The position numbers and the translations under genes were made by a program. A stretch of 63,792 bases of DNA, filler included, from Reticulomyxa filosa (taxonomy: Eukaryota > Protista > Foraminifera), in assembly GCA_000512085.1 (NCBI GenBank). It is 13 parts of 13 records of this genome, joined end to end, with 100 filler letters (N's around TTAATTAATTAA, not from the genome) between each part and the next. Parts side by side here need not be neighbours in the genome. Positions count along the whole stretch, not along the records: positions 35,126 to 60,642 come from ASPP01047817.1; 12 more parts are not named here. One strand, 5' to 3'. Under the pieces are notes generated by a model. It had not been told where the DNA came from. It searched no databases and was given only the letters and a program-made list of their open reading frames with translations. The number at the start of each line of letters is the position of its first letter. Position 1 is the first letter of the stretch. Positions 3,648 to 58,168 of this stretch are shown one piece after another.

Positions 3648-3859
3648 ACAACTTTTTTTTTTTTTTTTTTTTTTTGNNNNNNNNNNNNNNNNNNNNNNNN
3701 NNNNNNNNNNNNNNNNNNNNTTAATTAATTAANNNNNNNNNNNNNNNNNNNNNNNNNNNNNNNNNNNNNNNNNNNNTTTTTTTTTTTTTTTCTTCCTTCC
3801 TCCCCTACCCCTTTTTTCTTTACCTCTTTTTTTCAAAAAAAAAAAAAAGAGGAACATAC

Positions 3860-35125: not shown

Positions 35126-38100
35126 GAGAGAGAGAGAGAGCCCAAAATCAAAAAGTGAAATATAGTTGAGAGTGCTCTCATACAAAACTCGATGCAATCA
35201 CTCTTGTCAGTAGCCATATGATGAGTCAGCAAAATCAAGTTGACGAATAATCCCGCGACGCGAATGGATATTTCATTAAAATCCCTGCACTTGTTTTCTA
35301 CGGCGCCTTCCATGATGACATAGCCCTGAGGTGCGAGCAAGTCAGGTCGATATTCGGTCTTTCCCTCAGTGGCGCCATAGTCATCCGCGACAATGCGTCC
35401 ATCGGCCTGTACTTTGCCTAATCGCCGATTACCCGTGGCTGCTACGTGGCCGCCGGCGCCTTTCTTGTTTCCAATATCATGTCCACAAGTGGGACACTTG
35501 GCGCTTTCATTAGTGGCGGTGCAATTGGCCACGAAGTACAAATGGTTGTTGGGACACAACCAGGCACCTAGTCCGGCCATGACCTGCAACAGCGATGCAC
35601 TTTGATCCTCTGGCATTGCTACCAAATACTGGTTTGTGAATGTCTTGGGGTTGTGGAACAAAATACTGAAGGGTGACTGTGGTAAAGACAATACAGTGCC
35701 AAGGAAATGCCAAGCCAAGCGATAAAGCTGAATATTCTCTGTGAGAGCTGGTGTTTTTATTGCATGTTTAAACACTCCGCATTCGCAGTCGCCAATAGCC
35801 AATCTTTTACAAAAAACCAAAAATGTTTCGAGCGATTGAAAAAAAGGAGGCACATAAAACAAAAGAAAGACAAATCAACTGTGAGAGCAAGTATTTAACA
35901 CGGTCGTGACATCGCTCTGGATTTTCTAATTTGTCAGGGAGATATTTGATTATCGGCCCAAAGAAGTTTTTGGTCATGTCATAACGATCGAAAGGAGGAC
36001 TGTTTATGTATAACTCATTGAACACACCTATGTGATAATGATTGTAAATACATACACACGTGTCGACAATTGCATCCTTGGCAATGTTTTGTTGAGAGTG
36101 GTTTTGAAAAGAACAAAGGAACAGTTGACAAAAAACCTGCAATGAAATGGATAATATAGCGTCGTTCAAACCATGGCCAATTGAAATTCTTGGACTGAAG
36201 TGCTGCTGCAAATACTTGTTGCATATCGTTGTATTTTTCATCGAGTTTTTGATCTTGACAGTGCTCTAACAAGCGGAAGGCGTTGTCAGAAGGCGCATTG
36301 GGAATACGTGGAACATTGTCCGCCTTTTCTACTTGCATTGCAAAACCAAAGAGATGTTTGAATCTTTTGCTGTTCAAATGCAGCGCCGCGCGTGATCCTT
36401 TGCGTTTCCACAGCTCAGTCATCAAATAATATCCTAACCCTTGGCGAATTTTGCGTTCTTTATCGGTCATTTGCGCTTTCTGAGAAAGGTCGTACAATTG
36501 TCCAATGCTGGCGCAATCTTGTGGTGACAAGTACACTTTTAAACCCTTTTTCGTCCCTTGTATCCACATTTCTTTAATACCGTCGTCTCGATACGCGTAA
36601 GGAAATTCCATTGTCCAACTCAAGTAGTGTGACAAGTAATATGTCCACATCTTGCACTCCGCGACCAATAGCAACACTTCCAGCAAAACTCCATTTCGTA
36701 TTTTTTCGCTCAGTGATTGTGACAATCGCACAAATCTGCCAACGTCCGGCTTGTCTTGCGTTTCTAAACGTTTGCGCGAAGTGATTTCTTGGAAGTGCAA
36801 ATATTGTTCTTGGGCGCGAATTAAAAGAACAGCAAACTCGCCATTCAAATCACTTCCTTCGACATGGTTCACTAAAAAGTTTCGAACATTCTGATGTTCG
36901 TTCTGTGTGTCCCCCAAGTGGCAGAGAGTTGGATTTTGTTTTGTTCCTAACATACAAATAAAAATGTAACGCAACTCTTCGAATCAATGTAACCAATTGG
37001 GTTGCGATTTCCATTTTTGTAAACATGGTCGGCTTCAAAGTAAAGTCTGTATCTTTGCCAAGCAACCACTCCACAATCTTTTCGGCAAATTCGTCGTCAA
37101 TGATGTATCTCGTATCGGGGGCGACAATCGATGTCCTCAATCCGAATGTGTTGACGTAATTTTGTACAAACCATTGCAGCATTTCCTGTTTACCCTCCGC
37201 TTTGAGGTCCGTTCGACCCAACATACCCTCAATATGGTCCACCAAGTACTTTAGTGATAGGAAATTATCAAAGCGACATTGGGCAAATCTCGTTTTAATG
37301 ATATCGACAAACTTGTTGCTTTGAATTTGGTAATTGGTCGTCGTAAGACACAACATACATAATTTCAATTGATCCCATTGTTGATTCACCATTTGGAATA
37401 CATTTTGATCACGACAGCCTTTTCGCAACCATTGAACGATATTCTCAAATGCCTGTGATATCGAAACGAGTCGATCGAGATTGTGTTTCATTTTGTCGCC
37501 AGAAATATTTTGCCAAGACTTTTCAATTAGCTCTAGTACGACAATCAGTATTTTGCCCACGCATTCGTGTAGGCTTGCTTTCTCGTCCCAGACTGTGAAT
37601 AGTCGATGAAGGCCAAATCAACATCAATCACACACATACACATAATATTGGATATGCACATATACATATATGTATATATTGTATATCTCCAACAAGTGTA
37701 CATTACCTTTGATGACTTTCTCCAAATCCTTGGCAGAGTGATCTTGCAAAACGGATAAGACGTCGACAAAGTGAGACAAGAGCTGTTCGTGTGACCACAA
37801 AATGGCATACATTTCGGTGACTTGAAATTGGATATCTTCGGGCTCTGCTTCAGCTTCGGCATTTTTGACCTCTTCTTCGTCGACGAGCTCTTCCTTTTTC
37901 TCTTCGACAGGCAATTCGATTTGGGATCCTGTCTTTGGAGTGTCGGTTTTGGCAGCCGCGGCGGCGCGTTGTTCGATTTCGTCCATGAGTGCATACTGTC
38001 CCCACAAATTGTCATCATCTTCTTCTTCATTGTCGTTGTCACTGTCTACGTTATCGACAGCCACGTTTACGGGTCGCGTCGTTGCTGTCTTCGGATCGAG

Positions 38101-41100
38101 CTCTTGTTTTTTTTCCTCGTATTGTCCTCTTTCTCTTCTTGCTGTTTATCTTTGGGAATGGAGAAGTCTCGCTTGGTTTCCTTGGACGCACCGAATTTCT
38201 GCAAGGCTTCCATTGATGCTTTTTCGACAAACAGACACACGTGATTGACCAGCGTGTTGTATACGTGGGCGTCCTTCGAAAAGCGACGTAAGCCCAAGGT
38301 GCCACTGCTTTCCAAAAGCACGACGTCGTGCAGTAGTCGTTTGATGAGGTCCATCGACAATCGGTTCAAACTGATCTTCAATCCCGACGTCTGGATCGAC
38401 GTGTGTATCTGAACAATCAGAAACTCCACCAAACTTTCGCGGATGTCCTGTTTCATCCGCTCGTATACCTCGAAGCACACCTCGCGAAAAGAGGATACAA
38501 AGGCGTGCAGATGCGAGCTGAATGGGAAGCGGCCTCCTCCTGGAATGTCGTCCTTGGGAACAATCTCGTGGTTGTGTTCTCGATGCTCCCTTTGCGTAAC
38601 GCGAACGATTTTTGGCTCACTCAAAATACGCAAAAACAAATTGTCGATTCGTTCGTCCTTTTGTCTTCTGTAAAGCAAGGAATTGCCGTTTTCGAAAATG
38701 ACGCACAGAATTTCCACCAACAGATTCTTAATCTTCTGTGCCAAATTCGACATAAACTCGCTGCGAAGTGATCCCCTTTCGCGCAATTGCTGCTTCAACA
38801 CTGTTTTCAGACAGTATGTCGCTCCCGTCTCCGTGTCTAATAGCACATCTTGCAGTCGACCATTCAACACTTCTTGCAATTCGCCATTGTCGGGAGGATC
38901 GGCATTCAAGTAGGTGCGCAGAGTATGGATTTCGTCACAGAATTCGGTTTGGTTTCTTCGGCCGAAATTGATAAAGTTTAACGCCAACTCGTACGAGTCT
39001 GCCAATAACTTGAAGCTGTTAGGCTCGATTCGCTTTTGGATTTGCGTCAGAGACTGCGGCTCGAAGACATTGATGTCGTTGATCTGGACCTCGTTCAGAC
39101 TATTTGCCGGCAAAAGGGCATCGACAAACACATGCTTCCATAGACTATTGAATACCAAGGGATTGGTCAATACTGGGTCTTGTCCTTTTGAGGGACTGGC
39201 CACGCGATTGGAATAAAACAACATTACAAACGTGCGTTTCGGTCGAATGGCTTTCGTCTCATTGCTGCTTTTCTGATTCGCGACAAATGCCTTTTCCACG
39301 AGGTATTGCACGTGCAGGTAGTGCATCAACATGCTTTCACTCATCAGCGGATCGCATGCGATAACAAGCACACTGTGCTTCAACACGCAAGATACGTCGC
39401 GCAAAAAGTCGAATACGTACGTAAATAAATCTGTTTCTTGTACAAAGTCGCGCAAGTCTTTGAAGCGGATTTCGGTGAGTTCCGTGGTTTGGGACACCTG
39501 CTTCGTGTCTTTGGTCAGACGCGTGCAGATTGTTGTTAGGTCTTCCACTGACTTTGGAATATAAGAACTGTTCAATAGGTCATCTCTGGTTATCACATAT
39601 GCCTCGTTACCCTTCCGCAGTACATGTGTGTCCAGCAATTGAAAGTCGTGCGTCACCACTTTGATTAGTACTTGTTCGTTCTTTTCGTTCGCGCCTTCTC
39701 TTTCCAATACGTCCAACTTCGATGTGTCATCCAAAAAAAAAAACATGTACAATATGTATGTGTATGTCGGATTAAAAATATATATATGTATACACATATA
39801 TAAAGATAAGGTTAATACAATGTCGGCATATGGAATAAAGTCACGTTGTCGCTTTTTATCGTCAATCAAAATTTGCAGTGACGTGTTTTGCAACAACATC
39901 CTCAAACAGTTTTGAACAATTTGGTCAATTTGCACTTCTTGTGCCGCTTCTTCATTGTCAGTGTCATATTTCTTTTCTTCATTGGACTCGTTCTTCCTCG
40001 AGGTGGCCTCGTTGATCAATAAACTAATGTACGTATACCTTTCCAGAAATCCAACAAACAACGCGCTTTTTTTAAGTTGCAGACGATCGCTGAATCGAAT
40101 GGCAATGGTTTTTTGCAATTTGTCGAATTTGCTTTTCCACAAAGGATCCAAGCTGTATTGTTCCAACAGACTCGGATCCAAGAAAAACTTTTCAAAGCGA
40201 TTCAGGAACGCGACAGGGGTATGCAGATCGTGGTTTTTGGTTTCGTGAAACGCTTCTGCTCTGGACACGACCACCACACATCGGAATGTCTTGGCAATTC
40301 GACATCGAATGGATTCTCCTCCAATGCAAATGCGACAAAACTTTTGTCCATCGACCGATTGATACCTCTGATTGAGGATGTCATAAAGTGAATCGTATAA
40401 TTGCTCCAATTTCAATAACACACATATCTTGCCCGTGCTCATTGCGTTCCTTACTTTTTCAATGGTTCGATATAAATAAATGGTGGAATTGATATCTCCT
40501 GCAAATTTGCTGCCAAATATTACTTCGGTGGACTCCATTGTGGTGATGCCACTATCGAAAAGTATCTTCCACATCACCGGCGACTCGGTAATCAGCATGA
40601 TGTTGCGCATTTCGGGTCTCTTAATATCTCGCGACTGCTCGATGTTGTTGCGGATCAAATGCAAAGGCGAAAACTGCTTCCATATTATCTCCGGCTTTGG
40701 CAAGACATTGCCGTAAAAATACTTTGCGATTTTTGGGAATAAAAACTCTTCCGTTTGTTCTTTTGTCATCCCACCAAAGTTCCTCATCACGGCCTCGACC
40801 AGTAGCTCTCTGCTCACTCCACCACGCATCTGACAAGAGTACTTCAAGTAACTCGCCAGCGAATAAAAGTCCCTGTATCCGTAAAAGTCGAATTTGAACG
40901 GAGACATTTCGTGGTCTGTCATTATGCTGTTGTACAACTCTGCTATTTTTGGAACCTTTATCGACAAATCCTGTTGATAGTTTGCGTTTTCTCCTTCCAA
41001 CTTTTCGTTGATTATTTCGTCGGCCGTTGCCACCAGCTCCTTTGTGTCCGGTTGCATCACTTGGTGCAGTACCTTTCATTTGTTTTTTGTTTGCATTCGG

Positions 41101-44100
41101 ATATGTTGTGTGTTTATCTTCAAATCCAATGTGTGTATTGTCTTAACCATTCGATTCATCTTTGCCGAGTCCAATCTCCAGTTGCTCAAGCCAATGAATG
41201 CAATTTGTCGGTTGTCGTCTTCCAACAATTTGTGTAAGATTTTCAATGGTCTGTGTGGACCTAATGATCATCATTCGATTATTCGTTGTTTCATTGTTTG
41301 TTATTTATGACTTTTTTTATTAGAAAAAAAAAAAAAAGAAACTTTGTTCGGCTAATCCGACTTCATCCAGCCACAATACCACACTACGATTGCTTTTTGG
41401 TTGAGTCTTTTCCGCATCATTTTCCACCTTCTGTTCTTTTTCGTCTGTCCCGGATTGCTTCTTCGAAGGTATGGCTCTGTTTGTATTTGCACACAACGTA
41501 GTATCCACATTGGCCGAGAAAAAGAGAGAAAGAGAAAAACGCAACTTAAGTTTTTCTTGGAAACCAACAGCGTTTTCCCATCTTTTTCGAATTAAATCAG
41601 CAGTGGTCAATTTTGAGCATTGAAATGAAACCTAATACACATACGTGTAACAAATAGCATTGTTTGAACAAAACATAACAAAACACTGTGTGTTTGGTAT
41701 TTGCTACTTACGACAAAGAAATCATCAAAGTTCATTTCCGTGAGTCCCTTGCTTTTACTGGAAGATGACAGATTGCTTTGCACCACTGCCATGGCAAGTG
41801 TTTTGGAAGAACCTTTGTTTTCGTATTGTGTTCACAGCAGCCGTGTGTATGTGTGTGTGAGTGAGACAGACAAAAAAAAAGCAAAAAAAAAGAGGGGTTT
41901 ATACAAACCAGGACGCCCGACGACAATGGTTGGGGTCTTAGTCGCGAGTCCAACCAACATAACAAACAAGTTTTCACAAAAGGCACGGTTTTTGGCAATT
42001 CCAGGTGGAATATCTAATGTTCTCACGTATCTGTAAAAGGATATTGCAAACAGTTGTGTGCGAACGCAAAAGACAAAAAAAAAAATATCATGCCTTTGTT
42101 GTTCGTTTTCAACGACTACTCCAAATTGGATGTCTGTGTTAAGCTTTTTCAAAAGCTGTTCAACCAGGTTCTCATATTCTTTTCGTTGGCTCTTAGTTAA
42201 ACGATAATAGTAGCACTGTGCAAGAGATAAGATCATCGCTTCAATGACGCTCGTGCGTGTTTTTTTTCCTTCACGATTGTTGAAAAACCATAAGAACAGG
42301 GTATTGGCTCGACGCACGTCACGCAGTGAGCAAACACTCTGATCTTTTAATTTTTCTCTGTTCAAATCAATAAACATTTCAAAAACAAAAAAACGATTTA
42401 AAAAAAAAAAACAAACCTGACAAAATTTTGGGAAGTGAATATCGCATTAATGAAAAACAGTTTTAGGGAATCCAGCACTTTCGGTGTATTCTTCAGATCT
42501 TCAATGTTGTCAACAAACTCCTTTTTGGACCACGTGCTCGTGGTCATGACGGCAATATACTGCTGTTCGTCGTGTTGCGACAACGAGCCAAAGTTCCAAA
42601 CGTAGGTTTGCAACGACTTGGGCAAGGGGAAGACGCGATATACCAATTGACACATTTCTTTGTCCAAGTCATCCAAGTAGTGCTTGGTGACGTTCCTTTC
42701 CTCATCTTTTTCATCGGCGAGGTCTTCGTCCGTTTTGTGCCGAGTGCGATGTGGATTCAGTGCAGCGATAATGACGAGGTTGTCCGGAAACATCTGGCCT
42801 TTCAGACTGTGATCGCATACCACTTCTTTGAATGCTCCGATTTCAGGACTCGTGTTGATTTCATCCAAAAACACCAAATGGGTACGATTTGGATTGGTCT
42901 TTGCGCTCTCCAGAGGTGCCTCCAGATCTTTTTGCAAGTTTTCTACCGAGTAGCCTCCATGCACGTCGATCGATGTCATGGCAATGTTTAATGCACTGGC
43001 CATGAATTTCAATAGTTTGGTTTTTCCGCATCCCTTTTATATATACACATACATACATACAAATGTATATACATATATATTATATATGTATATACATTTT
43101 CGCAAAGTGCAAAGTGAAAACTGTTTCGCCCATGATCAAGACAGGTATTGCCGATTTGATTCGGAAAAATATGGAAACGATTTTCAAAATGTTATCAAAG
43201 GTCAGTGCGTAATCACTGTGTTCTGCCAGTATGTCTGACACTTGTTTGGTTCTCAATTTCTCGTCCTCGGATCTGTTGCACACATACACACACATATACA
43301 TGTATATAAGAATGATTCACTTTGATAATATATTTTTTTTGCTGAAGAGCAGAAATGGCCTATTGAACTTAAATCCACCGCAAATTTGCAACAGCAGATG
43401 CAACTTTTTGGCTTGATCGGTCATGTCTTCTTGATAAACTCCAACCTGCTTCACCGAATTTTGCTTTTTGATCAAGTCTTCCTCAAAGTTGTACAAATCC
43501 CATTTGTAGAGCCGACGGAGCAGCCTCCACTCTTGCGCGTGCGCATGGAGATTTTTGTCCAGATTCATCGACAGCAGCGACAAGGAGTTGTCCATTTGGG
43601 TGAGCTGCAGATCTTGCACAAGCGTGGTTTTGTGCATGTGCACTTGGATGGACTCGGAGATGGGGATCTGATTTAAGAGAACCATGGGAGGATCGGCCTT
43701 TTTCCACACTTTGACCAGGAAGAACTCTTCGTCGCCTCTGGACTCGTCGACCACATACTTTTCGTCTTCGTCGGCCTTGTCTTCGTCCAAGCGCTGATAC
43801 ATGTCACATGCGATATGTTCCCGGATTGCGCCAGCGAGCTGACGATCATTTCGTGCAAAGGGACAATGTGCAGTGGACTGTGACTGTGATGGGGACGTTT
43901 TCGTTTTTGATGTAAGGAAGTTGTACACCTGGACCAATTGTCGATACATGAATTGCAGGAACGACTTCAATTGAACCAGACTGTGTTCCGCTCTTGGAGC
44001 ATACTTATTGATTAACTGCAACATTCGAGCTCGGTCGATCTGGGGATGAGTTGTGTACGTCCAATCGTCTTTGGGGTTTTGCGTGTTCTTCAGTTGTCCC

Positions 44101-47100
44101 TTGTCCAACGCATCCAAATACTGCAACACAAAGTGTTCCTTCGGAGAAAGCTGCAATTCGTTTTTAAGGAACTGCGCAAACTTTGGTCTGACGTCTCGCA
44201 ATTCGTCGAACACTTCTGTCGACGGAATTGCAAGCTCTTTGATACGATCTCCGAAGAAATAAAACCATTTAAACACGTCCTCCAAACGGGTCTTCTTGTG
44301 AGTGGTCGACAGCTGCGTCGGCAATTCGACTAAAAACGCGTGGTTCTTGCGAACGCTGAAGCTCTCTCCGTTGCTTTTCGTGAGATAGCGCAGCACCAAC
44401 AGTTGGAACATCATCGTATTTACGTCCTTGCCTGCCTGTGTCGATATGTTAATGTGAAACACCATGAGGTCGTCCGTGACAGGGGCACTCGCGAAGCGAT
44501 CCACGACAAAGTCGGTGTCCAGAACAGGAGTGTTGATCGGAATGTGAACAAAGTGTCCTTCCTTCAATTGTAAACTTTTCACCATCTCCGTGATCACGTG
44601 GGATTTACCGACGCACTCATTTTGCGAAAAAAACACGGTCACAAAGGGCGCTTTGTTCTTTTTCTCGCGAAACGCTTTCAGGTCGCCACATAACACGTCC
44701 GAATAAAACGACTTGCTCTCTTCTTGCTGCAATATCGGCGACTCAATCTCGCGGAATGCGGACAAGGCCTGCGCCACCAAGCATTGGCCGTCTGTGGTAA
44801 TAATTGCCAACAGCGAGGTCTGGTTATGCATATACATCGGGAGAATTCGAACCAAACCCTGTTGAATGGAACGAGTTAACAGCTCGGGCAAAACGAGACA
44901 ATGCAATAGATTGCGTCCTGACTCCCTCGAACTTTTGTAACAACTGCGAATTAGAAAACATTCCAATTGCTCGATAGATGTCAAGTGGTCACAAAAGATC
45001 ACCTAAATTATGTATTGTTGCATTGTGATATACTGTAATTAAATATATAATATATATTTATATTTATATTTATATTTATATTTATATTTATATTTATATT
45101 TATATTTATATTTATATTTATATGTAATGCACGTAACTCGACTGGCAGTTGGCCGCTGTCCCTGCAACAAGTACAATTTGACCACATGGGACAAGACTTG
45201 GGTGTCTTTGCAAAAATATATGTGCGGCTGTCCACTGTGCAAAATATTTCCATGCTGTCTCCACTGAAGAGCGAAGCACTTTCGTCAAGTTGCTTTGAAA
45301 ATAACTCAAAGCCTCTCCGAGTTGACTCAATATGTCGCCATCCCAATTCCAATTCTTTCATTAAAGGAAGATCACACAAACAGTTATTCTGCGCATTGTT
45401 GATGTATGACAAGAGAGCAGAGACAAACATCTTTTCTTTAAACTGTTTTGGAGCCAATGGCGTTTTCAATGTCGGCAATAGTGATATCGGGATGAATGAA
45501 CGAAATTTTGGAAGCAATGGCTCCCAGATAGTTGCTCTTATCGGCGCTTTGAACGTACAGACGAAGATGATCACATAAATAGCGCATATCATTGATGGTA
45601 TAAAATAACAAAACGGGATATTTTTGTCGAAGCTGTTATAACGAAATGTATACGTGTGATGCAATATATAATGTTGAAGGATGAGAAGACAGATAAAGCC
45701 TAAAAGAAAATACCTTAGTAACGGTGGTTTTCCACGATTCGAGACATTCCTTCCAATAGCGATCAAGTTTTTCAAAGTCGTCTGCATTCCGCGATAAGTC
45801 AATGACTCGATCTTTGTTCAATTCGTCGCGTCCGCCAAGGGCATAATACTGCAATCTCTTTTTTGCGATGCTTTTGCATTTGTCGAATTTCGGAATGAAA
45901 TCGTTTTTCACTTTTTCTTTGAGCATTTCGAAATGAACGATTTTAATAATTTCGGATACAACTTGTTCTCGATTGATGGTAAGATCGACATTCTGTCCCA
46001 AGATCAGATCACCCAACTCTCGCGTAGATTTTTTCAAGTGTTCGGAAAGTACTTTGCCGGTGACATTGTGAGATCGCAGACGAGTGAGAATGAGATTGAG
46101 AGTCTCCACGTTGACTGACGAGAGTTGCTTTCGACGCGAGCGAAGCAGATTCTCGACGTCTTCGCGAGTCAAAGCGCTGAGTCCTCTTTGCGAAGTGAGC
46201 ACATCGCTCTCCACGGCGCCCGAGTCTCCTGTCATGTACATCAATAGTCTGTCCGTCAGTTGTTCGAATTCGTCCTGCGTCAAATCAATATGCGTTGCAG
46301 TTGCGTCGAGTGCAGTGGTGTTTTGATACTGAATACCCATGTACTTTTCTCGGTCGGGTCTGCTTTCGTCGGTGAAACAGACAGTACGAATTTTCTCCAA
46401 TTGGTCCTTGTCTGTCTGATGCAGCCATCCCTGCGGATCAATGGCATCGCGGATGAGTGACTCCCACGAGGATCGAACCACATTGAGACACTCCAACTTA
46501 TCCGCGTCAATATCGTGTTGCGATATCTGCAGCAGACGTCTTTCCATCGTCGATATGTCCTCATACTCGCCATTCAGAAAGCCGACAACGAACGTGCGCA
46601 CCTGCATCAGACTGGTGCTCCGCGAATGTTGCACCGGATCGTTTTCCGTAAAGTTTTGCATGTGTTCGTTGAACACGTTGTCGTTTTGGAACGTGGTGTG
46701 ACACTCCTTGATGATCTTGCTGCTGCTCACCAGCAGACGAAGCCATTCAATCGAAACGGTGGGAATGTCCGGGAATTGATCCTGATGATCCAACCAAAAT
46801 TGTTGAATTTTGGCCATTGGTGCAGTTTCCTTATCAAAGGATTTGAGCAATTGCTTTTCGGTCTCCCATCTGTCGTCATTCCATCCGTCCTGCTTGTTAC
46901 GCTTGTACAGCAAACCAAATGTCGTTGTCACGTCTCGCAACAATTTCAATGCCTCTTCGCGACGGAAGCACTCAAATACTTGACTCAAGGCCGTTGCCTG
47001 CGTTTGATACATTTCCATTTTTCGTAAGCAAAAGTCTGTGTTCTTCAACACTATCCTTTGTGCCACAAATATTACCCACGACTCTTTGCTCTTTGAGATT

Positions 47101-50100
47101 TGACACTTGTCCACTATATCCGACCATTGTATCTCTCTCACCGCAACTGTCGTCTTGTCGCTTTGATTGGCGATTCGCACAATTTCCTTTTTAATCGCTC
47201 CAATCAGCACGTATTCGCTCAATGCGCCCGTCCCATTCAGCAGTAGCGGCATTTTCATATCCAGTCCTTTGCACAATCGTCGCAATGCGTCCACCAGTTT
47301 GCTGTCCGATTCACCCTCCTTTGGCTTTGGCACTGTCATTGTCGACAGCTCCTTCAGCTCTGTCTCGGACAGGGCGATAGTATCCGAGAATCGTGTATGC
47401 GGTTCATACATTAGACGAATCTGTTTCTCGATTTCCTCCACTGACTTTTTGCGCAGCAGGCCAAAGTCGGTGGCAATACGTCGGCCGTTCACGTTGCGTT
47501 CTTTCAGTTCTTGTTTGGCTGATTCCCATTTCGCTTTGATATTTTTGAAGAGTTCTCGAAGAGTGGTAAGATGGAATTGACGTTGGGTGGGTGGGAATTT
47601 CAGCAGTATTTCTGCCAATTTTGTTTTCTATTGTTACGAGTAATGTTGTGAAAATATACACATATATATGTACATATATACGTATATATATATGTATGTA
47701 TATGTATATATTATATTATGTAATAGTTTAACTTTTTCTTGAACGCAATTCCACAGACACAAAGTGACTTTTTTTTCAGCCTCGGAAATGGTGTTTGCAG
47801 ATTGCCCGGGATACAATGCATTCAACAAACTCTCCACATTCCAACCCGTACTGTCCATCTTGATTCCATCGATTTCCTGCTCAAAGAACTTGTGGACGTA
47901 CTTTTCCAAATCAAATTGTTCCAAGTCTCTGGTCAGAGTGCTCTCTTGTTCTCTGATCCAGTTGCACAGCGCATAGGTGTCATACGACGACAGTGGTCTG
48001 AGACTCCATTGAATTTCATACTCTTCTACCACCGTCCTCCACATCGATAACGAAATATCGGACGCTTGGATTTTCTCAAAAGCTTCGAATATGGCTTTGG
48101 CCTCGTTGAAGGCCGACCAATCCATTTGGAGTGCAGCCTGCAGAGCTATTTCATCCCAGCCATGGGCCGTGGTCATTTTCATGCTCAGTTCATGCAATTG
48201 TTGTAGTTCGTTGCCAAACCACGCTTGTCGAATGCTGGAATTGGCGAAAAAGTTTTGCAACAATTCGCGATTCGATTTGATTTTGCCAAACTTTGCCATT
48301 AAACTGCGGACGCTTTTGATATCGATTGCCGTACCCGTTTTTTCGTCGGAGTTACTCGTGTCGTTCCACAGTTCGAGGAGCATTTCCAATTTTTCATCGC
48401 TTACGAGCATTTCCATCACCGCCACGCTCACTGTTTCCTTTGTTATTTGTTCGCACAAATGCACAAGCCACAAGCAATAGGACTCGAATACTTCCGATTT
48501 TACTTGTTTTCTTATCTGGCCCAAAAACCTGATGTTTGTGTGATGTGTGTCATACTTTATATAAATATACATATATATGTATATTTATATATGTTGTATG
48601 TATATATGTTTGTATGTATTGAATACTAAACCGCAACAATTGCAATCCTTCCTCCGAGGTCACGTAGTTAGCAATCTCATTCAGGTCTTTGATGTGAGAT
48701 GAAAATGGATGAAACCCATCCAACAACTGATCCAGTAGTCGACTCACTACCTTCCATTGCGACTCTGTCTTCATCCACGACCTCACTACGTTTATACACT
48801 CCACACGTTCGCCCGCGTCCAATGCCATGTAACTGCCTCTCAAAAACTTGGTTGTCCATTTTTTGTGTGATTGTCGCAATGATCTTCTCTTTCACTGTTC
48901 ATACACAATCGGATAATATGTGGACTGTAATCAGTTGCTCAAAAACCAAACACCAAAATAAAACAAAACAGTTGTAGGGCATTTGCTCCGTGGACAGGAG
49001 TTTCACTTTGTTGATAAACAGTTGGTCCAGATACTTGGACAATGGCTCGTTCGACGATTGGAATATGGCTTGGAATGTCTCCCAGTGCAAGTTGTACTTG
49101 ATAATATTCTCAACGCTTTCTGCAAACCCATACTTTGATAGCCAGCATCCAAAGATACGTTTCAACAGCATTTGTGTTTCTGAGATTGGATATTGGACCT
49201 GTGTGACATTTTAAAATATACCAAATGAAAACAACAAAGACAAAAACAAAGACAGAGCCAACGATCTATGAACTTGGATTGACTCCAAATAAAATGGGAT
49301 AAATCGAGTATCGGCGAGTAGAAATGGACTCTCTAAAATGAACATTCGGGCCATTCGACCTAACACTGGGAAGTCTCGGAGTAGTTTAAGTAGACAGTCG
49401 GATTCATTGACTGTGGCAATTCGTTTGATCAAGTCTCCCATTATTCGCTTGTCCAAAAGTGAAAGTAGCTTTTCATTGAGTTTGTTATCCGCGCTGGTCC
49501 GTTGTACCAATTGTTGCACTATTCCAACTGCTAATTCGCACGGCAAGTTTTGTACAAACTGCGAAAAATCGTATTTGAAATTTTCCAATAAAACAAGTAG
49601 CCGATCACGAAAACTGGGTAAATACTTTTCCATTGTGTCGAACACTGGTTGAGTGTTTTTGTCATCAAAAACAAATGCATATATGTATACATATATATTT
49701 ATATTTTTTAGACAACGTACGTTGAAGCATCAAATCGTGCTTTGTGGTACTGTTTGTTGCAGAAACGTCTCGCAAAAGACTTCCAAAAAAATACTCTTCC
49801 ATAGGGAATGGTCGCTGAGGCAGATTTACAAGTCGCAATTCGATTTCCACCAATCCCAACACATTTTCCTGCTGCTTCGTCATCGAGTTCAACTTTTCTT
49901 TGAAGGCGCGCACATGCGTATCCTTGTTTTTGTTTAGCGCGCAGATGCTAAATAAATTGTACCACATCAAACTGAGAAGAACTTCCTTTATGTCAGTTTT
50001 CTTTGCAATTTTGTCGACCAAAGAGATTTGAATGCTGTCCAAATGGTCCAAAGTCATTGCTTTCAAATTATTGATCACTGTCTGTAAGAAGTAAATATGT

Positions 50101-52778
50101 TTTTGATTTTCAAGTAATATTGGATATGTATGTATGTGCATGTATGTGTATCATTTTACAGTATAACACACCAATATATCTCCAATGTGTTCATTGCCTA
50201 GGAAATTATAAAAAAGAAACAAATGTTCGTACTGCACGTCAGCTGATAACATCCAAAGCACACACATTCCAAAAATTAAGCGAGCAATTTGATCCCATGA
50301 TATTACCTTTTCATGCATTACGGCTTTGAAATTGCTTAAAACAAAGGTTGCTATTTTCTGGCGCAATGCCTGAAAGTCGACTTTGTAACAACGGTTTTCT
50401 TTTTGAGTGCTACAAGTCAGCCAAAACCTTTTCATGATTTGTAGAGACGTATTCACCGAGATCGTGTCGTTTATTCGAAGATACAGCCACACCAAAATGG
50501 TGACTGCGTATTTTACGTACTGTTCATGAGGGATCGAACGTATCATTCCTTTTTCCGTGACATCATGCACGATAGCCCTACAAGGAATAGTGATATCGAC
50601 CTTCTCATGCTCTCGCTTTGCTGTTTCGATCACGTATGAGACTTTGCTCTTTTTTTTTTGAATTTCACTTAAATTCCATACGCAATGGTACACAGAAACG
50701 TCTTCTCCGATTTTTTCGAACATTAGACCTTTTTTTTTTATTTATTGCCATTGTTTTTGCAGATAGAACATATCACAAGTCATATATATACACACACATA
50801 TATGTATATGTAAAAACTGGAGCTATTGGCAACACTGGGACGCAAAGAATAGTCATCGTCCTTGCCCGACAGCAGGATAACGTGACACAATGAGTTGGGC
50901 TCGGCCAGGATGGATTCTTCACTGGTGACTTCGAGCACGTCGCTTGGCGGGGACGTGTATCTTTTATCTCCCCAGCTGCACACACTCTGCACAAACAGCG
51001 AGCGACGATCTCTATCGATTGAAGACAGCAGATTACAGACGCTATTGATATCAGTCCAATCGGAACAGGACGATGGATCTCTGTCGCGCCCCCACGCGAT
51101 TTGGTAAGAGATAAATCCGATCGCTTGATATGGGGAATGCCAACACATCCATTTCTTGGAATTGTCCCGGAACACACGCACATGCGTAGGAGCAGACGGT
51201 TCAAAGTGTTTCGTCGAATCCTGTACTTCGACAGATGGGGTCATAAACACGACGGGCCACGTTTCTTTAGTCTGTTCCTTGTCCATGTTCTCTTTTTCGC
51301 GTATAGCGGAGATGGTGATAAAGTACTCCGTGTCGGGGACCAAATCATCGGACATCCACTCAGACTCATAGGTGGTGCCAATGACTTGGCCGTAATGGTG
51401 GTTGTACTCGCGAATCAGATACTTTATATTCTTGTTTTTTGGGTCCTGGGCGAAGCGAGCTGGCCACCACTGCAGTTTCGCGGACATTGGCAGGACCTCT
51501 AAAAGTTGGGGGAAAATAGGACGACAAGGAAGCACAGACAACGAGAGCATCTCTTCGAACGTCTTATGTGTACGAACACGCAATGGCTCTGTCCACAGCG
51601 ATTGCTCCATATCTTGCTTTTGTTCTAGATTGTTAAGCATTCGCCATTCAAAACATGTTTGCAGTGATATATCGTACACACAATTTTCTTTCAAATTATC
51701 CAACACTGCATAACGCTTCTTGTTTGATACTTTCCATGTCATCTTTCGCTCTTCTTTTTCATCTGTATTCGTCGCACTCTCTTTTGTATCTTCGCCACTC
51801 CAATCTCCAGATGCGTTTGCATTTGTCCTTGTATTTGTTTTTTTATTGGTTGAATTACTTTTGCTATTGCTATTGCTATTGCTATTGCTATTACTATTGC
51901 GATTATTATTGCCATTGTTTTTACTGTTGACTTCGGATGCATTCGACGATTTCAAATCTTGCTCTTTTGCACAAACCTCAAACCACCACATACTCTGCTC
52001 GTTCAATCCATGTGCACGGAGTTGATCCATGTTATACTTACTCATTTTCTGCTTGATCCATCCTGTGGACACATCCTCCACACTCCAGTTTATTATTATT
52101 TGATTCACTTCCACTCCAACAATCCTCGTTTGGATTGGGATGCACGTCACTGTTGTTTTTTTTTTTAATTAAAATAAAAAAAAAAAGGGTCACTTGGGAT
52201 CGACGTAGAATCTCCCTTTCCACTCTATTTTTTCCTTTTCCTTACGCTTACCCAGTCTTTTGATAAGGAATTCTTTGAGGAAGGACTGTGACGATAAATT
52301 CGATGAATCGCTGTCATTTGTATCTGTAGAGCTTGAGGACTTCTCTGAATCTTCAAACTCCGTTTGCAATGTGTCGTCGTCCACGATCTCGACATCCGAA
52401 GAACAGTTGCTCAAGATTTGATGTGCGTCTTTAAAAGACACCATCAACCATTTCACATTCTTCGAGTAATCGTCATCCATTATTCCTGGAATCTCTTCTT
52501 TGAACTTTTTTTTTATTTGATCAACCAAATCTTTATATTTCATTTCTTTTATTGTTTCGCTTGTTAATTTTGAAAATGTTATATCCTTGTAGCTGCACTC
52601 CTTTTTATAAGTGTGCTCTCCGTTGTCTACATATACTCGCAGAGTCACTTTCCCTTCGCCTAATCACAATACATATCACCGTATGTTGTTTTTTAAATTT
52701 AACCGACAAAATGTTCAAAGCAAAAATCAAGTATATACAATGTTATTGAACTACTTTTATCAGACCTGTGTCACTCAT
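35126..52778 (-). CDS. RNF213: Giant RNF213/mysterin-like dynein-related AAA+ ATPase / RZ-type E3 ubiquitin ligase, many exons, 3'-truncated by the contig end
   Basis: RNF213-family motifs appear in the expected order: GQPHIYFC...IFCDHLTSIEQLECFLIRS; SQNECVGKS; DYALTFDNILKI...PVLIMGET|GCGKT; VFLDEINT; IIAALNPHR; QLVYRVFPLPKSLQTYVWNFGSL; SVCSLRDVRR; IAKNRAFCENLF...VVGRPG|SSKTLAM; LDEVGLAE; GLSNWRLDSAKMNR; FYGYRDFYSL; MRNFGG; IFGSKF; AMSTGKICVLLKLEQLYDSLYDILNQRY; FLNRFEK; RFPFS; RZ finger CPNNHLYFVANC...CPTC. The first three introns (from 52765, 52251-52150, 50817-50729) join in frame from ATG 52778. Confidence 0.93.
45055..45123 (+). repeat. (TATATT)n intronic microsatellite
   Basis: About 11 perfect copies inside an intron of the RNF213-like gene. 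Confidence 0.95.
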
Positions 52779-54109: not shown

Positions 54110-57100
54110 TTATTCGGTAGCATTGAGAATTGTGATAAGAGGATTTTCACCCAACCAATCAGTGGATTTCACTTTTCCTAATTTATCCAATCGATCCAAT
54201 ACTTTTTTCAACTCGCTATGTAGCAAATGCTATTTGAAAGCAATGTCCAATACATGCAGTCAGTAAAAATGTCAAAATACAAACGTACCAAAAACAGATA
54301 GAACAAAAAAAAAACAAACTTTAGTGTTTTCAGGTAAATCTTTGTTGTATTTGTTCAGTAAAGTCATAAATTTGATAGTGCGGTCTTGGTGATTTCTCAG
54401 AATCTCCAAAACCAAATTCGATTGCTTTTGTAAATCTAATTCTTCTGCCATAGATCTTCCAACATTGAGTCTGTCTAGATCAATGGCCCCAGTTTTTGGA
54501 TCTGTGGCAGCAGCTAACGTGGCGACTTTGTGCAAGCGAACGGCTTCCTCGACGTCATCCTCTGTCACAGACGAAGAATGTCGCATCCTGGCCAAAGCTT
54601 CGCTGATGCGAATCAACGACTCCAACTGGCGAGGAGTGGCGGTAATTGTCTTTCGTCCATCCTGACGACCCATTCTTCGCATTTCACAGTACTTTTCTTG
54701 TAATCGGTGACATGCACGATCCGATAGCGTTGGATGTATTTCCCGACGACTGTAGGAAATGTAATCCATCAAGAGTTGCTGATCGATTAGGCCGGATTCG
54801 ACCTCTTCCTCTCGATTCTGTCATGTTTATTGTAAAGTTTGAAATGAACACAAATATAAGATAGGAAAAAAAAGAAGAGGGTAAACATAACTGCATAATA
54901 CAAAGACACAATGTGCTTTGCCAATTTTTTGTCAATCGCTTCATTTGGTCTGTCCAAAACCAAGTAAATCAAATCAAATCGACTCATTAAAGTCGGTGGC
55001 AAGTCAATATTTTCGACAATGGACTTGTTTGGATTGTATCGACTGTCGACGGGATTGGCCGCTGCCAAAATGCATGTGCGAGCATTCAACGTGCAAATGA
55101 TCCCTGCTTTTGCAATGCTTACTGTTTGTTGCTCCATCACCTCGTGCAATATGCTTCTGGCTGACTCACTCATTTTGTCAAACTCATCGATGCAACAAAT
55201 ACCACGATCACTCAACACGAGAGCACCAGACTCCAATACCAAGTCACGGCTGTCCGCGTCTTTGGTAATGTATGCTGTCAACCCGACCGCCGAGGATCCC
55301 TTTCCGCTCGTGTAAATGCCGCGAGGAGCAATCTTATGCACATACTGCAACAATTGGGACTTGCTTGTTCCAGGGTCCCCACACAACAGTACGTTCATTT
55401 GACTTCGAAAGCGGCCGCCCCCTCCAGCAGAAAAATCCTTGTCTGAGCTTCCAAACAACTGACACAAAACACCTTTTTTGACATCTTCCATTTCCCAAAT
55501 GGAAGGAGCCAAAGAGCGAACTAGCTTTTCGTAAATATTTGGGTCTCTTCCCAAGTCTTTCAACTGTCTAATGCGAGTCTCTCGTCGAGCTTCCGACTCG
55601 TCCAGCTCTTCAAACGTTGTAAAGCTGTCCGTGTCTTTTTGGCTTTTACTACTTTCCACTGTAAACTGGTTCGACTTACTTTTTTTCACATGCAACGCGT
55701 CCACATATGTTTTGTACACAGCCTGGATCTGTCGTCGTCGAGGATTGGCACGGATGGCTGCCTTTGGTGGAATATTTCAATCTTTTGATTAGGTCCACCT
55801 CACAGGGAACGAGGGAAAAAGCAAAATAAATAAATAAATAAATAAAATTTGAACTGCACGATAAACACCGGTTACTTCAATCCGGTCGCCAGGCTTGCAA
55901 ATGTCTACCAAGTTCTCGTACACGTAAACGTCAATGGTTTGCGGAGTTTCACCATCAGGGATGTGTTCTGGGGTCTCTTGCACCTTTACCAACTGCTTGT
56001 CTTGGAATTTGCATCGATTGTGTATCAATTCCATTGTGTTCCCACTCTTTTGTTTTTTTTTTTTTTTAAAAAAAAAATACAACGGAAAAAAATGAATGTG
56101 CAAATGTAGTGTTTCGTTTTTTTTTTTTTTTTTTTCCGCGGACTTTGTTTGCTCGTCATAGCAACAAACACTTGACAAAAAATCTATTTCTAACGCCTCT
56201 CAGCTCTCAATAGTTTTTGTTGTCAAAATGGACGGACCTGACAAGAGACGTTTGGACATTTGATGGGCTCTTCGATTCTGCCCGCTTCAATCATATTTTC
56301 CACTTCTGTGTGACACAACACACATCTGAAAAAAGCGGTTTGAATGTCTGGAATGGTCCCGGTGCAACGAATCACCATGCCTTGGACGGCAACTAGCTTG
56401 TCAATGTCGGACGGGTTCATGTTTCGCATTGATTTTACTTCGCGTAAATTGAAGGGTCGAATCCAAATGTCGACCTGATCTGTGTGCTCGTCGATTATTC
56501 TTTTGAAGTGGTCCTCTGTTCGTTTGTTTTGTTTTGTTTATTGGTTTGTTGATTTTTGAATTCAAACGTTGCTCATTTATTCTTTTGCTCAATCGACACC
56601 CCTTTTTTTTTATTCGAGTTGCTTAACCAGCATAAACGTTCACTTGCGAATCAAATGCAGGCACTACTTCAGATGGAAAATTGACAGTTTGATTGTACAA
56701 TTCTCGGTCAAAGTTGTAGACGTTGCTCATATCCAAATTTAAATTTGTCAGCTGAAATAATATTTTTTTGTATGTTGTGGTGTTCTTTGGTTGTCGTTCT
56801 TACTTTTTTTTTTCCGGACTTGTTCCCCTCTTTGTCATTTTTTTTTTTTTTTTTAAAAAAAAAGGACCGACGTAGGCATATTGATGCAATGGTTGTTGTT
56901 TTTTTTTCGACACAACAAAAACAAAGCGAATAAGTATAAATATATGCAAACTTGTGCTTCTAAACAGTCTTGAATTAGATCTGTGTACAATTTTTCTCCG
57001 TTTTTCTCAAATGCTGAAATAAAGCGACGAAATCGTTTGCTGACATCGTCAATGTTGATATTAGTTCCCCATATTGTACTTGCTGCTACTGGCTGGCTAT

Positions 57101-57408: not shown

Positions 57409-58168
57409 TTTTTATTTGAAATAAAGTTTCTGTTTATAAAGAAAAAAGTGGCAATTGGCGCCTCGAGAAAAGTTCAGTCAAAACTAAAAAAGAGCCTGTC
57501 TTCGCGAAACTGATTGACTAATTTAGCTTTCTTATTTTTGGCAAAAATAAACAAGATGGAAAATGCAAATTCAAAAGTCGCGTATTCCAAACAAAAGATA
57601 GAGACACAAAAAATAGTGGAGAAAAGTATTTGTAAATTAAGATTTAATTCTGTATCAAATATCACTCGGTGCTAATAATTCAAAAGTGTAATTTTGAAAG
57701 CTATGATTAGATTCTTTGTGAGCACAAGTATTCTGAAATTCATGACGAATCACAATCAGTTCACGTCGGTTACGTAATTCTGAAAAAGATCGTGATGTGT
57801 TTGATCTCGCTAGAGCCGAGTTGAATACTTAGCAGCTTTGATCTTTATCAATTTCTCAAGAAATAGTAGTGGAGTTATCATATTTCTTTAGATCGAAAGG
57901 TAAACAAAATTGATTTTGTTCGGAAATTGGCTGTGTAGCAAAAAAAATGTTGATTTCTTAAAATTAATGACTTTTTGTGTGCTGAAAATTATTTAAATTT
58001 TGATATTGAGCATTTAAAAAAAATTGAGTTAGTGCCTTTGATGAAGTAGTGATACTTTTAGAAGAAAAATGTCACCTTTAATTGACCTTTTTGGCAGGGG
58101 AAAAAAAGAAACCAAAATTGCGTTCCAACAGCCCTTTGTCAAAAATAAGAAAACCCCTATCCTTTTGA

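What the first reader, a model, noticed from the sequence alone, without database searches (positions are those of the whole stretch)
35126..52778. Giant RNF213/mysterin-like AAA+ E3 ligase in a protist: candidate cell-autonomous antibacterial ubiquitylation system
Seen: more than 17.6 kb of minus-strand exons carry, in order, the stalk-proximal motifs, the dynein-like AAA ring (Walker A GETGCGKT and GRPGSSKT; Walker B FLDE and WLDE) and the E3 module with an RZ finger. The gene has host-type introns and shares its contig with MCM4 and an SR gene, so it is nuclear and not an animal or bacterial contaminant. Established: animal RNF213 senses cytosolic pathogens and ubiquitylates bacterial LPS through its RZ finger. 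Inference: a bacterivorous single-celled eukaryote, probably a foraminiferan, has a full-size version, possibly to tag escaped or endosymbiotic bacteria. I cannot tell from here how well protist RNF213 homologues have already been described.
Basis: partly seen in the sequence, partly recalled or inferred. Interest (0 to 1): 0.9.

Follow-up and report, generated by a model that had tools for sequence, protein, structure and literature searches.

The report
RING-less RNF213-like giant ligase, foraminiferan
The locus is one very large nuclear gene of the foraminiferan Reticulomyxa filosa that encodes a relative of the human immune and moyamoya-disease ubiquitin ligase RNF213; it lacks the RING domain, is cut off by the contig end, and belongs to a family found across eukaryotes, so it is real but not unique.

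Summary
Window 35126-52778 (minus strand) is a contig of Reticulomyxa filosa. GenBank splits the locus into four "hypothetical" genes, but it is one gene of about 24-27 exons and at least 5,100 codons.

- **Motifs:** Walker A GET|GCGKT and GRPG|SSKT (each split by an intron), Walker B FLDE and WLDE, and a Pfam RZ finger (E 1.6e-14) are all present, in RNF213 order.
- **Family:** Sequence searches against solved structures hit only RNF213 (E 8e-27). A good AlphaFold model of the 1002-codon exon matches RNF213 structures over about 970 columns (E 7e-32), against 2e-9 for dynein. The E3 shell aligns to vertebrate RNF213 by profile comparison (98.9%).
- **Differences:** There is no RING or U-box. 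The general-base histidine of the RZ finger sits four residues later. The N-terminus has no CBM20. The last 700-850 codons lie beyond the contig end. Four or five frame breaks are unexplained.
- **Context:** R. filosa has at least 11 paralogues. Homologues of 2,700 residues or more occur in Naegleria, Physarum, Thecamonas, Amoebophrya, chlorarachniophytes, brown and green algae, a fungus and animals, mostly under automatic names. No paper found discusses them.

The antibacterial role is untested speculation.

The parts
35126..52778 (-). Whole RNF213-like gene as far as the contig holds it. It has about 24-27 exons, about 15.3 kb of exon, and introns of 39-138 nt. GenBank annotates it as four separate genes: 52778-45438, 44837-43317, 43003-38067 and 37986-35413.
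   Evidence: Paralogue proteins bridge all three annotated gaps. The locus is colinear with paralogue locus L002 over window 49729-35128.
52755..52778 (-). Annotated start codon and a short first exon (MSDTGLIK) followed by GT. The position of the start is not verified.
49730..52663 (-). N-terminal region with no detectable relatives. It includes an Asn/Ser repeat (51861-51917).
   Evidence: No homologue of 254-808 aa was found. There was no tblastn hit from any family member. The repeat is shown.
51293..51493 (-). Possible fibronectin-III-like beta-sandwich domain (weak evidence).
   Evidence: Pfam fn3 scores 24.5 bits, just under the cut-off of 25, with E 3.1e-5. Language-model look-alikes are all fn3, score 0.92 with low recognition. 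The single-sequence fold failed.
45444..49729 (-). Arm or stalk region preceding the AAA ring. It is conserved at 30-35% with an R. filosa paralogue and includes a 1,905-nt exon.
   Evidence: tblastn against L002. P0016 residues 7-415 match 46511-45135. Language-model look-alikes are dynein tail, which is a lead only.
43321..45357 (-). Part of AAA1 and AAA2, with a degenerate P-loop (ECVGKS, GKS at 44609-44601).
   Evidence: phmmer against mouse RNF213 residues 1977-2101, E 3.5e-6. The motif is shown.
45241..45244 (-). T4 run where the paralogue-supported reading changes frame without an intron.
43807..43922 (-). Three successive 1-nt frame changes in the same direction. Residues conserved in relatives (YIKNE.VP, H.IPLHEM..SL.QS) are encoded in the two other frames. 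The nominal frame stays open.
42417..43272 (-). AAA3. Walker A is GET|GCGKT (43130-43122 plus 43033-43019), split by intron 43121-43034. Walker B is FLDE (42871-42860).
   Evidence: The Walker A is identical in vertebrate RNF213. tblastn gives 35-37% identity to fish and lamprey RNF213.
41343..42357 (-). AAA4 N-terminal half. Walker A is GRPG|SSKT (41918-41909 plus 41812-41799), split by intron 41908-41813. Walker B is WLDE (41373-41362).
   Evidence: Vertebrates have GKPGSSKS and VVLDEIGLAE at these positions.
38070..41075 (-). Single 1002-codon open frame covering the rest of AAA4, AAA5, AAA6 and the hinge.
   Evidence: phmmer against the PDB hits only RNF213, E 8e-27. The AlphaFold model has pLDDT 83.9 and pTM 0.82. 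In Foldseek the top 8 hits are RNF213, E 7e-32 to 6e-26 over about 950-980 columns, and dynein follows at 2e-9.
38042..38114 (-). Frame change between annotated genes 3 and 4. It is either a 1-nt error or mutation in the A8 run (38114-38107), or an unusually short 29-nt GT..AG intron (38070-38042).
35872..37995 (-). E3 shell exons with no RING or U-box.
   Evidence: Profile comparison of foraminiferan against vertebrate E3 regions: probability 98.9%, E 1.6e-17, 548 columns. There is a gap where vertebrates have a RING and Ectocarpus a U-box. Pfam controls are and the regular-expression scan.
35422..35583 (-). RZ finger WLCPNNHLYFVANCTATNESAKCPTCGHDIGNKKGAGGH. The four zinc ligands and the nucleophile Cys (equivalent to human C4516) are kept. 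The general-base His lies at +13 from the last Cys instead of +9.
   Evidence: Pfam PF20173, E 1.6e-14. Alignment to human RNF213. Family alignment. Residue roles are taken from the bioRxiv preprint 10.1101/2025.10.14.682297.
35126..35421 (-). Start of the C-terminal domain. The frame is open to the contig edge, which ends in a (GA)n run, so the rest of the gene is not in this piece.
   Evidence: open frame and contig end. Homologue matches run to 35179. Relatives have 620-900 residues after the RZ finger.

Best explanation
Window 35126-52778 (minus strand) is a single nuclear gene of Reticulomyxa filosa. It is mis-annotated as four genes and cut at its 3' end by the contig edge.

It encodes a giant protein: at least about 5,100 residues here, and probably about 5,900 in full. 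The protein belongs to the pan-eukaryotic RNF213-like family. Its layout is:
- a lineage-specific N-terminal arm;
- a dynein-like AAA+ ring in which AAA3 and AAA4 keep complete Walker A and B motifs;
- a hinge;
- an E3 shell without a RING or U-box;
- an RZ finger that keeps its zinc ligands and nucleophile cysteine.

Inferred mechanism, by homology with mouse and human RNF213: ATP binding or hydrolysis in AAA3 and AAA4 gates a RING-independent, transthiolating ubiquitin ligase. Ubiquitin passes from an E2 to the RZ cysteine and then to a substrate, possibly a non-protein hydroxyl group. The substrate and the cellular role are unknown.

The gene is one of at least 11 diverged paralogues in this genome.
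For: **Shown:**
- Organism and contig are identified, and the neighbours MCM4 and an SR gene are nuclear-type.
- It is one gene. The AAA3 Walker A is split by an intron exactly at the annotated gene 2/3 boundary. Paralogue proteins RFI_22618, RFI_22838 and RFI_05388 span all three boundaries. The locus is colinear with paralogue locus L002.
- It belongs to the RNF213 family. PDB sequence hits are only RNF213. Vertebrate RNF213 matches AAA3, AAA4 and the RZ finger colinearly. Walker motifs are identical or near-identical. Foldseek gives E 7e-32 to RNF213 over about 970 of 1002 residues, against 2e-9 for dynein. The E3 shell profile comparison gives 98.9%. Pfam finds the RZ finger.
- The catalytic Cys and the zinc ligands align with human C4516, C4505, H4509, C4525 and C4528.
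- At least 11 paralogues overlap the same 250 residues at 72% identity or less.
- Transcriptome-derived homologues exist in the foraminifera Nonionella and Bolivina.

**Inferred:** the catalytic mechanism. RNF213 ubiquitylation is RING-independent and needs the RZ finger and the AAA ATPase (PMC12203941; PMC11549300).
Against: - No RNA data could be listed for R. filosa, so expression and splicing of this copy are unverified.
- There are four or five places where the reading frame supported by relatives changes without a canonical intron: 45241-45244, three within 43807-43922, and 38042-38114. If these are real, this copy may be damaged.
- The general-base His of the RZ finger is displaced by a 4-residue insertion shared by the foraminiferan clade.
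- AAA1, the N-arm and the missing C-terminal domain were not shown to resemble RNF213.
- The exon chain is a crude model. It mis-places exons near 45.0-45.4 kb and 41.7-42.0 kb.
Confidence: 0.8

Rival explanations
1. This particular copy is a recently inactivated or decaying paralogue (pseudogene) within a large family. The frame breaks are real mutations.
For: There are four or five frame breaks. Three of them are not in long homopolymers, and they scramble about 40 residues that are conserved from R. filosa paralogues to distant relatives. The family has at least 11 copies, so losing one is affordable. Another paralogue (L002, RFI_14863) has already lost the RZ nucleophile Cys. The MCM4 gene on the same contig needs no frame correction over about 2.1 kb, which is a weak control.
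Against: Exons of 2,952, 1,905 and 1,682 nt contain no in-frame stop codon. All catalytic motifs are intact. The three clustered shifts go the same way and sum to 3 nt. One other break lies in an A8 run and another in a T4 run, as low-quality read ends and homopolymer miscalls would give. The assembly is a highly fragmented draft with N50 of 3.6 kb (PMC13746701).
Confidence: 0.25
2. The protein is a cell-autonomous antibacterial sensor and ligase that ubiquitylates LPS or other surface molecules of escaped or endosymbiotic bacteria.
For: This rests on homology only. Animal RNF213 does this through its RZ finger and AAA ATPase, and both elements are conserved here. The expansion into at least 11 diverged paralogues and an N-terminus without detectable relatives fit the pattern of immune gene families. 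R. filosa is a phagotroph (general knowledge).
Against: Nothing in the sequence points to bacteria. The window's N-terminal exons have no CBM20, lectin or lipid-binding domain. There is no expression or localisation data. Animal RNF213 also acts on lipid droplets, viruses and host proteins. The family also occurs in non-phagotrophic algae and a fungus. R. filosa is known for many expanded gene families, so expansion alone is weak evidence.
Confidence: 0.15
3. The GenBank annotation is right: there are four independent adjacent genes.
For: The annotation itself. The paralogue locus L002 is split in a similar way.
Against: The 2/3 boundary cuts a Walker A motif in half at a canonical intron, and the same split happens at the same intron in L002, which points to a gene-predictor artefact. 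Annotated paralogue proteins cross every boundary. The four pieces are colinear with single RNF213-family polypeptides from many lineages.
Confidence: 0.03
4. It is a dynein, midasin or ZNFX1 relative rather than an RNF213 relative.
For: The AAA fold is shared. Dynein motor domains appear in Foldseek at E 2e-9, and weak Pfam AAA_5 and AAA_8 hits were seen. ZNFX1 also has an RZ finger.
Against: The PDB sequence search returns only RNF213. RNF213 structures beat dynein by more than 20 orders of magnitude. No SF1 helicase or NFX1 zinc fingers were found in any exon.
Confidence: 0.01

Closest known systems
Vertebrate RNF213 (mysterin), e.g. mouse 6TAX/7OIK and human 8S24
   Same: - The order is the same: arm, six-module dynein-like AAA ring, hinge, E3 shell, RZ finger.
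- The AAA3 Walker A, GETGCGKT, is identical.
- The AAA4 Walker A, both Walker B motifs and the NRFEK-type motifs are near-identical.
- The RZ zinc ligands and the nucleophile Cys are conserved.
- The fold of AAA4 to the hinge is similar (Foldseek E 7e-32).
   Different: - There is no C3HC4 RING in the E3 shell.
- No CBM20 was detected.
- The RZ general-base His lies 4 residues further along.
- The N-terminal 2,000 or so residues cannot be aligned.
- Overall identity is only about 20-35% even in the core.
- R. filosa has at least 11 paralogues, against one or two in vertebrates.
- The C-terminal domain is not on the contig.
Uncharacterised giant AAA+/RZ proteins of other protists and algae, e.g. 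Naegleria gruberi NAEGRDRAFT_79490 'RZ-type domain-containing protein', Thecamonas AMSG_01915, Amoebophrya, Amorphochlora, Ectocarpus, Cymbomonas CYMTET_14987
   Same: They belong to the same family by sequence: 2,136 proteins of 2,727 residues or more at E<=1e-10. They share the AAA core plus the RZ finger. Many also lack a RING.
   Different: The foraminiferan sequences form their own long-branched clade. Stramenopile-type and chlorarachniophyte members carry a U-box where vertebrates have the RING. Some members carry CBM20, UBA, WWE or PH domains that the window's exons lack.
ZNFX1
   Same: It shares the RZ finger with the same zinc-ligand and Cys/His catalytic layout, and it can ubiquitylate non-protein substrates.
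   Different: ZNFX1 is an SF1 RNA helicase with NFX1 zinc fingers and a Miz domain. None of these is present here.
Dynein heavy chain and midasin AAA rings
   Same: They also have six AAA+ modules concatenated in one polypeptide.
   Different: Structural similarity is much weaker (E 2e-9 against 7e-32). Sequence searches return no match. They have no E3 shell or RZ finger.

Membership tests
RNF213 (mysterin) sensu stricto | Single-chain dynein-like ring of six AAA+ modules | tested here: met
   AAA2 matches by phmmer at E 3.5e-6. AAA3 and AAA4 match by phmmer at E 8e-27 and by colinear tblastn. AAA4 lid, AAA5, AAA6 and the hinge match by Foldseek at E 7e-32 over about 970 columns. AAA1 was not shown on its own.
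RNF213 (mysterin) sensu stricto | AAA3 and AAA4 carry complete Walker A and Walker B motifs (the two active modules) | tested here: met
   The window has GETGCGKT with FLDE and GRPGSSKT with WLDE. Vertebrates have GETGCGKT with FFDE and GKPGSSKS with VLDE.
RNF213 (mysterin) sensu stricto | E3 shell between the hinge and the RZ finger | tested here: met
   hhalign of the foraminiferan profile (which includes a window exon) against the vertebrate profile: probability 98.9%, E 1.6e-17, 548 columns. Part of the score comes from the segment next to the RZ finger.
RNF213 (mysterin) sensu stricto | C3HC4 RING domain inside the E3 module | tested here: not met
   No RING pattern occurs in any minus-strand frame. 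The multiple alignment has a gap at the RING position. Pfam finds a RING in the fish control and a U-box in Ectocarpus, but nothing in the window's exons or in paralogue P0014.
RNF213 (mysterin) sensu stricto | RZ finger with four zinc ligands and the catalytic Cys/His pair | tested here: met
   Pfam PF20173, E 1.6e-14. The pattern is C-x3-H, Cys at +7, then C-x2-C. The general-base His is at +13 rather than +9, so that one residue is inconclusive.
RNF213 (mysterin) sensu stricto | C-terminal domain of about 700 residues after the RZ finger | not testable with these tools
   The contig ends about 100 codons after the RZ finger. The domain is present in paralogues RFI_30897 and L002.
RNF213 (mysterin) sensu stricto | N-terminal CBM20 carbohydrate-binding domain and stalk | tested here: not met
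   No CBM20 hit in any N-terminal exon. There is only a borderline fn3 hit. The fold of the N-terminal exon failed, with pLDDT 33.8.
RNF213 (mysterin) sensu stricto | RING-independent, ATP-dependent ubiquitylation of LPS or pathogens | not testable with these tools
   This needs biochemistry and cell biology.
Pan-eukaryotic RNF213-like AAA+/RZ family (database-level, unnamed) | RNF213-type AAA3-AAA4 core followed, about 1,300-1,600 residues later, by an RZ finger in one polypeptide | tested here: met
ZNFX1 | SF1 helicase core and NFX1-type zinc fingers upstream of the RZ finger | tested here: not met
   No such Pfam hits in any exon.

The most novel reading that the evidence does not exclude
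Foraminifera carry an expanded, RING-less branch of an RNF213-type ligase family that is spread across most eukaryotic supergroups. Its members act as cell-autonomous sensors and ligases that coat bacteria, symbionts or other foreign surfaces with ubiquitin. If so, RNF213-style immunity, including ubiquitylation of non-protein substrates, would predate animals. The RING or U-box and the N-terminal binding modules (CBM20, fn3, UBA, WWE) would be interchangeable accessories.
Probability: 0.15. Interest if true: 0.8.

Novelty: new variant of a known kind. Interest (0 to 1): 0.5.

Why it matters
RNF213 is studied almost only in vertebrates, as the moyamoya disease factor and as the ligase that ubiquitylates bacterial LPS.

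This locus and the searches it prompted show that the same architecture exists in a foraminiferan, and in Discoba, Amoebozoa, Apusozoa, Alveolata, Stramenopila, other Rhizaria, green algae and a fungus. The AAA3 and AAA4 motifs and the RZ catalytic cysteine are conserved. The RING is absent in the foraminiferan clade, apparently absent in some other protist members, and replaced by a U-box in others.

That supports the view that the RZ finger plus the AAA ring is the ancestral catalytic core. It also offers simple phagotrophic or algal systems in which to ask what the ancestral substrate was.

For genome annotation, it shows that the R. filosa gene set breaks giant genes into several 'hypothetical proteins'.

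Tried and rejected
- **RNA evidence:** The look-up of sequencing runs listed no run, so read laying could not be used. Expression, splice sites and the frame breaks remain untested.
- **N-terminal exon (50783-52168):** the homologue search returned nothing at 254-808 aa. The single-sequence AlphaFold model was useless (pLDDT 33.8), so no fold search was run on it.
- **Language-model look-alikes:** fn3 for the N-terminal exon and dynein tail for the 663-aa exon. Both had low recognition scores and are kept only as leads.
- **Second exon chain:** a version weighted by tblastn hits produced spurious frameshifts, because the hits read through short introns. I discarded it in favour of the first chain plus manual checks.
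- **Automatic scan for frameshifts between adjacent tblastn hits:** it found mostly introns.
- **RZ exon alone against the PDB:** only E 0.5, although the alignment is residue-consistent. I rely on the Pfam hit instead.
- **Other scans:** Rfam and tRNA scans of the piece found nothing.
- **Literature:** the Glöckner 2014 genome paper is not held. Seven literature searches found no paper on non-animal RNF213, and one search was badly framed.
- Exons were searched separately by reference.
- **Contamination:** I considered and rejected contamination, on the grounds of R. filosa-type short introns, the MCM4 and SR neighbours, and homologues in foraminiferan transcriptomes.

Full report
**What the piece is.** Only 35126-60642 is real sequence. 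The 1002-codon open frame 38070-41075 (minus strand) is 100% identical to part of RFI_39478 of Reticulomyxa filosa, on a 25,517-bp contig, ASPP01047817.1. Upstream on the same strand lie an MCM gene and an RRM plus Arg/Ser-repeat gene. The MCM gene (54275-56537) carries Pfam MCM, MCM_OB and MCM_lid domains, and its best solved relatives are all MCM4 (E 1.8e-113, against 1e-74 for MCM7). The RRM gene lies at 58081-60357. Introns in my exon chain are 39-138 nt, in line with the published mean of 87 nt for this genome (PMC13746701).

**Checking the observation.**
- Both Walker A motifs exist but are each split by a canonical GT..AG intron. The first is ...LIMGET | GCGKT... (intron 43121-43034). 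The second is ...VVGRPG | SSKT... (intron 41908-41813).
- Walker B VFLDE (42871-42860) and LWLDE (41373-41362) follow at the expected distances.
- The exon at 35128-35874 holds a Pfam RZ-type zinc finger (E 1.6e-14, 53.7 bits against a cut-off of 27).

**One gene, not four.** GenBank calls four same-strand genes of 2155, 506, 1534 and 736 residues. Several results show they are one gene.
- The 2/3 boundary is an artefact. It falls at the intron that divides GET from GCGKT, preceded by a 48-nt in-frame intron.
- The annotated paralogue RFI_22618 aligns continuously across boundaries 1/2 and 2/3, with gaps where the window has introns.
- RFI_22838 and RFI_05388 cross boundary 3/4.
- A second R. 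filosa locus (L002, contig ASPP01010825.1) is colinear with window 49729-35128. It is split by the annotators in the same way, again at the Walker A intron.
- A simple GT-AG exon chain gives about 24 exons and 15.3 kb of exon. It skips two small exons near 45.3 kb and mis-places the exons around the second Walker A, so it is approximate.
- All searches used single exons by reference.

**Family assignment.**
- phmmer against all solved structures returns only RNF213 chains: E 8e-27 for the 1002-codon exon (mouse residues about 2387-2629 of the 6TAX construct) and E 3.5e-6 for the exon at 43320-45002 (AAA2 region).
- Full-length lamprey, fish and frog RNF213 match the window colinearly at AAA3, AAA4 and the RZ finger.
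- The motifs are strikingly conserved. GETGCGKT is identical in vertebrates. The AAA4 Walker A is GKPGSSKS in vertebrates and GRPGSSKT here. Walker B is FFDEANT and VVLDEIGLAE in vertebrates, against FLDEINT and LWLDEVGLAE here.
- An AlphaFold model of the 1002-codon exon, built from a 50-sequence alignment, has pLDDT 83.9 and pTM 0.82. Its eight best Foldseek hits are all RNF213 structures (E 7e-32 to 6e-26, about 950-980 aligned columns), and dynein motors follow at 2e-9.
- A profile of the foraminiferan E3 region, including a window exon, aligns to a vertebrate E3-module profile with 98.9% probability over 548 columns.

**What is different.**
- There is no RING. No C3HC4 pattern occurs in any frame. 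In a family alignment the foraminiferan sequences and the window have a gap where vertebrates have the RING, and where Ectocarpus and a metagenomic relative have a U-box. Pfam confirms the controls: a RING about 480 residues before the RZ finger in fish, a U-box about 520 residues before it in Ectocarpus, and only the RZ finger in the R. filosa paralogue.
- The RZ finger keeps C-x3-H, the Cys at +7 (human C4516, the proposed nucleophile) and C-x2-C. The His that serves as general base (human H4537, +9 from the last Cys) sits at +13 here and in the other foraminiferan sequences with a standard RZ pattern.
- No CBM20 is detectable. The N-terminal 900 or so codons have no relatives and only a borderline fn3 signal, and folding that exon failed.
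- The frame is still open at the contig edge, about 100 codons after the RZ finger. Complete relatives have 620-900 more residues, so the gene is 3'-truncated in this assembly.

**Frame problems.** Relatives show that the true reading changes frame without an intron at several places.
- Three successive shifts in the same direction lie within 43807-43922. There, conserved residues (YIKNE.VP, H.IPLHEM..SL.QS) lie in the two other frames, while the nominal frame happens to stay open.
- One shift lies at a T4 run, 45241-45244.
- One lies between 38114 and 38042. It is explained either by a 1-nt change in an A8 run or by a 29-nt GT..AG intron.
- The long exons have no stop codon and all catalytic motifs are intact. 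The draft assembly is very fragmented, with N50 of 3.6 kb. I favour assembly error at roughly 60-70%, but a recently damaged copy cannot be excluded. MCM4 on the same contig needs no correction, which is a weak control.

**Context.**
- Ten other R. filosa proteins overlap the same 250 residues of AAA4, at 31-72% identity to the window and to each other. The genome therefore has at least 11 paralogous loci.
- Two of these fragments were named 'ring finger protein' by the genome authors.
- One paralogue (L002) has Gly in place of the RZ nucleophile.
- Homologues derived from transcriptomes exist in the foraminifera Nonionella stella and Bolivina argentea.
- Beyond foraminifera the family is very broad. 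There are 1,031 representative clusters at E<=1e-3 and 2,136 proteins of 2,727 residues or more at E<=1e-10.
- Named members come from Naegleria, Willaertia, Physarum, Thecamonas, Amoebophrya, Amorphochlora, Gymnochlora, a cercozoan, Ectocarpus, Cymbomonas, the fungus Entrophospora, and invertebrate and vertebrate animals.
- In quick unrooted trees the foraminiferan sequences form a well-supported, long-branched clade. It is separate from the vertebrate clade and from the other protists.
- No paper in the searchable library discusses non-animal RNF213. One preprint notes only that the ZNFX1 RZ domain reaches back to choanoflagellates.

**Mechanism and verdict.**
- Shown: the architecture and the conserved catalytic residues.
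- Inferred from mouse and human work: an ATP-gated, RING-independent ligase that passes ubiquitin through the RZ cysteine.
- Unknown: the substrate, the role, and whether this copy is expressed.
- The antibacterial reading is a reasonable hypothesis with no direct support here.
- The finding is a correct identification of a RING-less variant of a known family. It is of moderate interest, mainly because the family's wide distribution outside animals is unexplored in the literature.

Noticed in passing
window 54275-56785 (-): An MCM4 orthologue. The ATPase exon gives E 1.8e-113 to MCM4 structures. It can be modelled with five exons and GT-AG introns of 41-124 nt, with no frame correction.
   Followed up: partly
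window 58081-60357 (-): An SR-type splicing factor gene. It has an RRM (Pfam E 6.8e-12) followed by an Arg/Ser/Asp-rich region encoded by hexamer and 12-36-nt tandem repeats (58317-58619).
   Followed up: partly
L002:14111-14419 (paralogue RFI_14863, contig ASPP01010825.1): In this complete-3'-end paralogue the RZ finger reads CPQKHLFFAADG...CSLC. It has Gly where the nucleophile Cys should be, followed by a poly-Asn insertion. Its RZ is probably catalytically dead.
   Followed up: partly
P0161 (Ectocarpus fasciculatus) residues ~3690-3750; P0053; also P0182 Amorphochlora and P0183 Gymnochlora: Stramenopile-type and chlorarachniophyte RNF213-like proteins carry a U-box (Pfam PF04564, E 5e-9 and 1.5e-14) at the position where vertebrates have the RING. 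Foraminiferan members have neither.
   Followed up: partly
P0195, P0260 and other rows: Precomputed Pfam lists show CBM20 (PF00686) in some protist family members, and UBA, WWE, PH, NHL or EF-hand domains in others. Accessory domains appear to be swapped between lineages. CBM20 was recently described in the human RNF213 N-terminus.
   Followed up: no
window 43121-43034 and 41908-41813: Both active-module Walker A motifs are interrupted by introns at almost the same motif position: after codon 3 of GETGCGKT (phase 0), and after the first base of codon 4 of GRPGSSKT (phase 1). It is unclear whether this reflects an old intron predating the AAA duplication, or chance.
   Followed up: no
window 45053-45123; 47660-47722; 48571-48619; 35126-35140: Introns carry TA/TG-rich microsatellites, for example (TATATT)x12. 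The contig ends in a (GA)n run, which probably caused the assembly break inside the gene.
   Followed up: no
P0218: A 5,630-residue family member is labelled 'ATP-binding protein [bacterium]' in NCBI, on a 110-kb contig. It is either a eukaryotic contig binned into a bacterial MAG or a real bacterial homologue.
   Followed up: no
window 51861-51917 (-): An in-frame hexamer repeat encodes (Asn-Ser)n inside the N-terminal exon.
   Followed up: no
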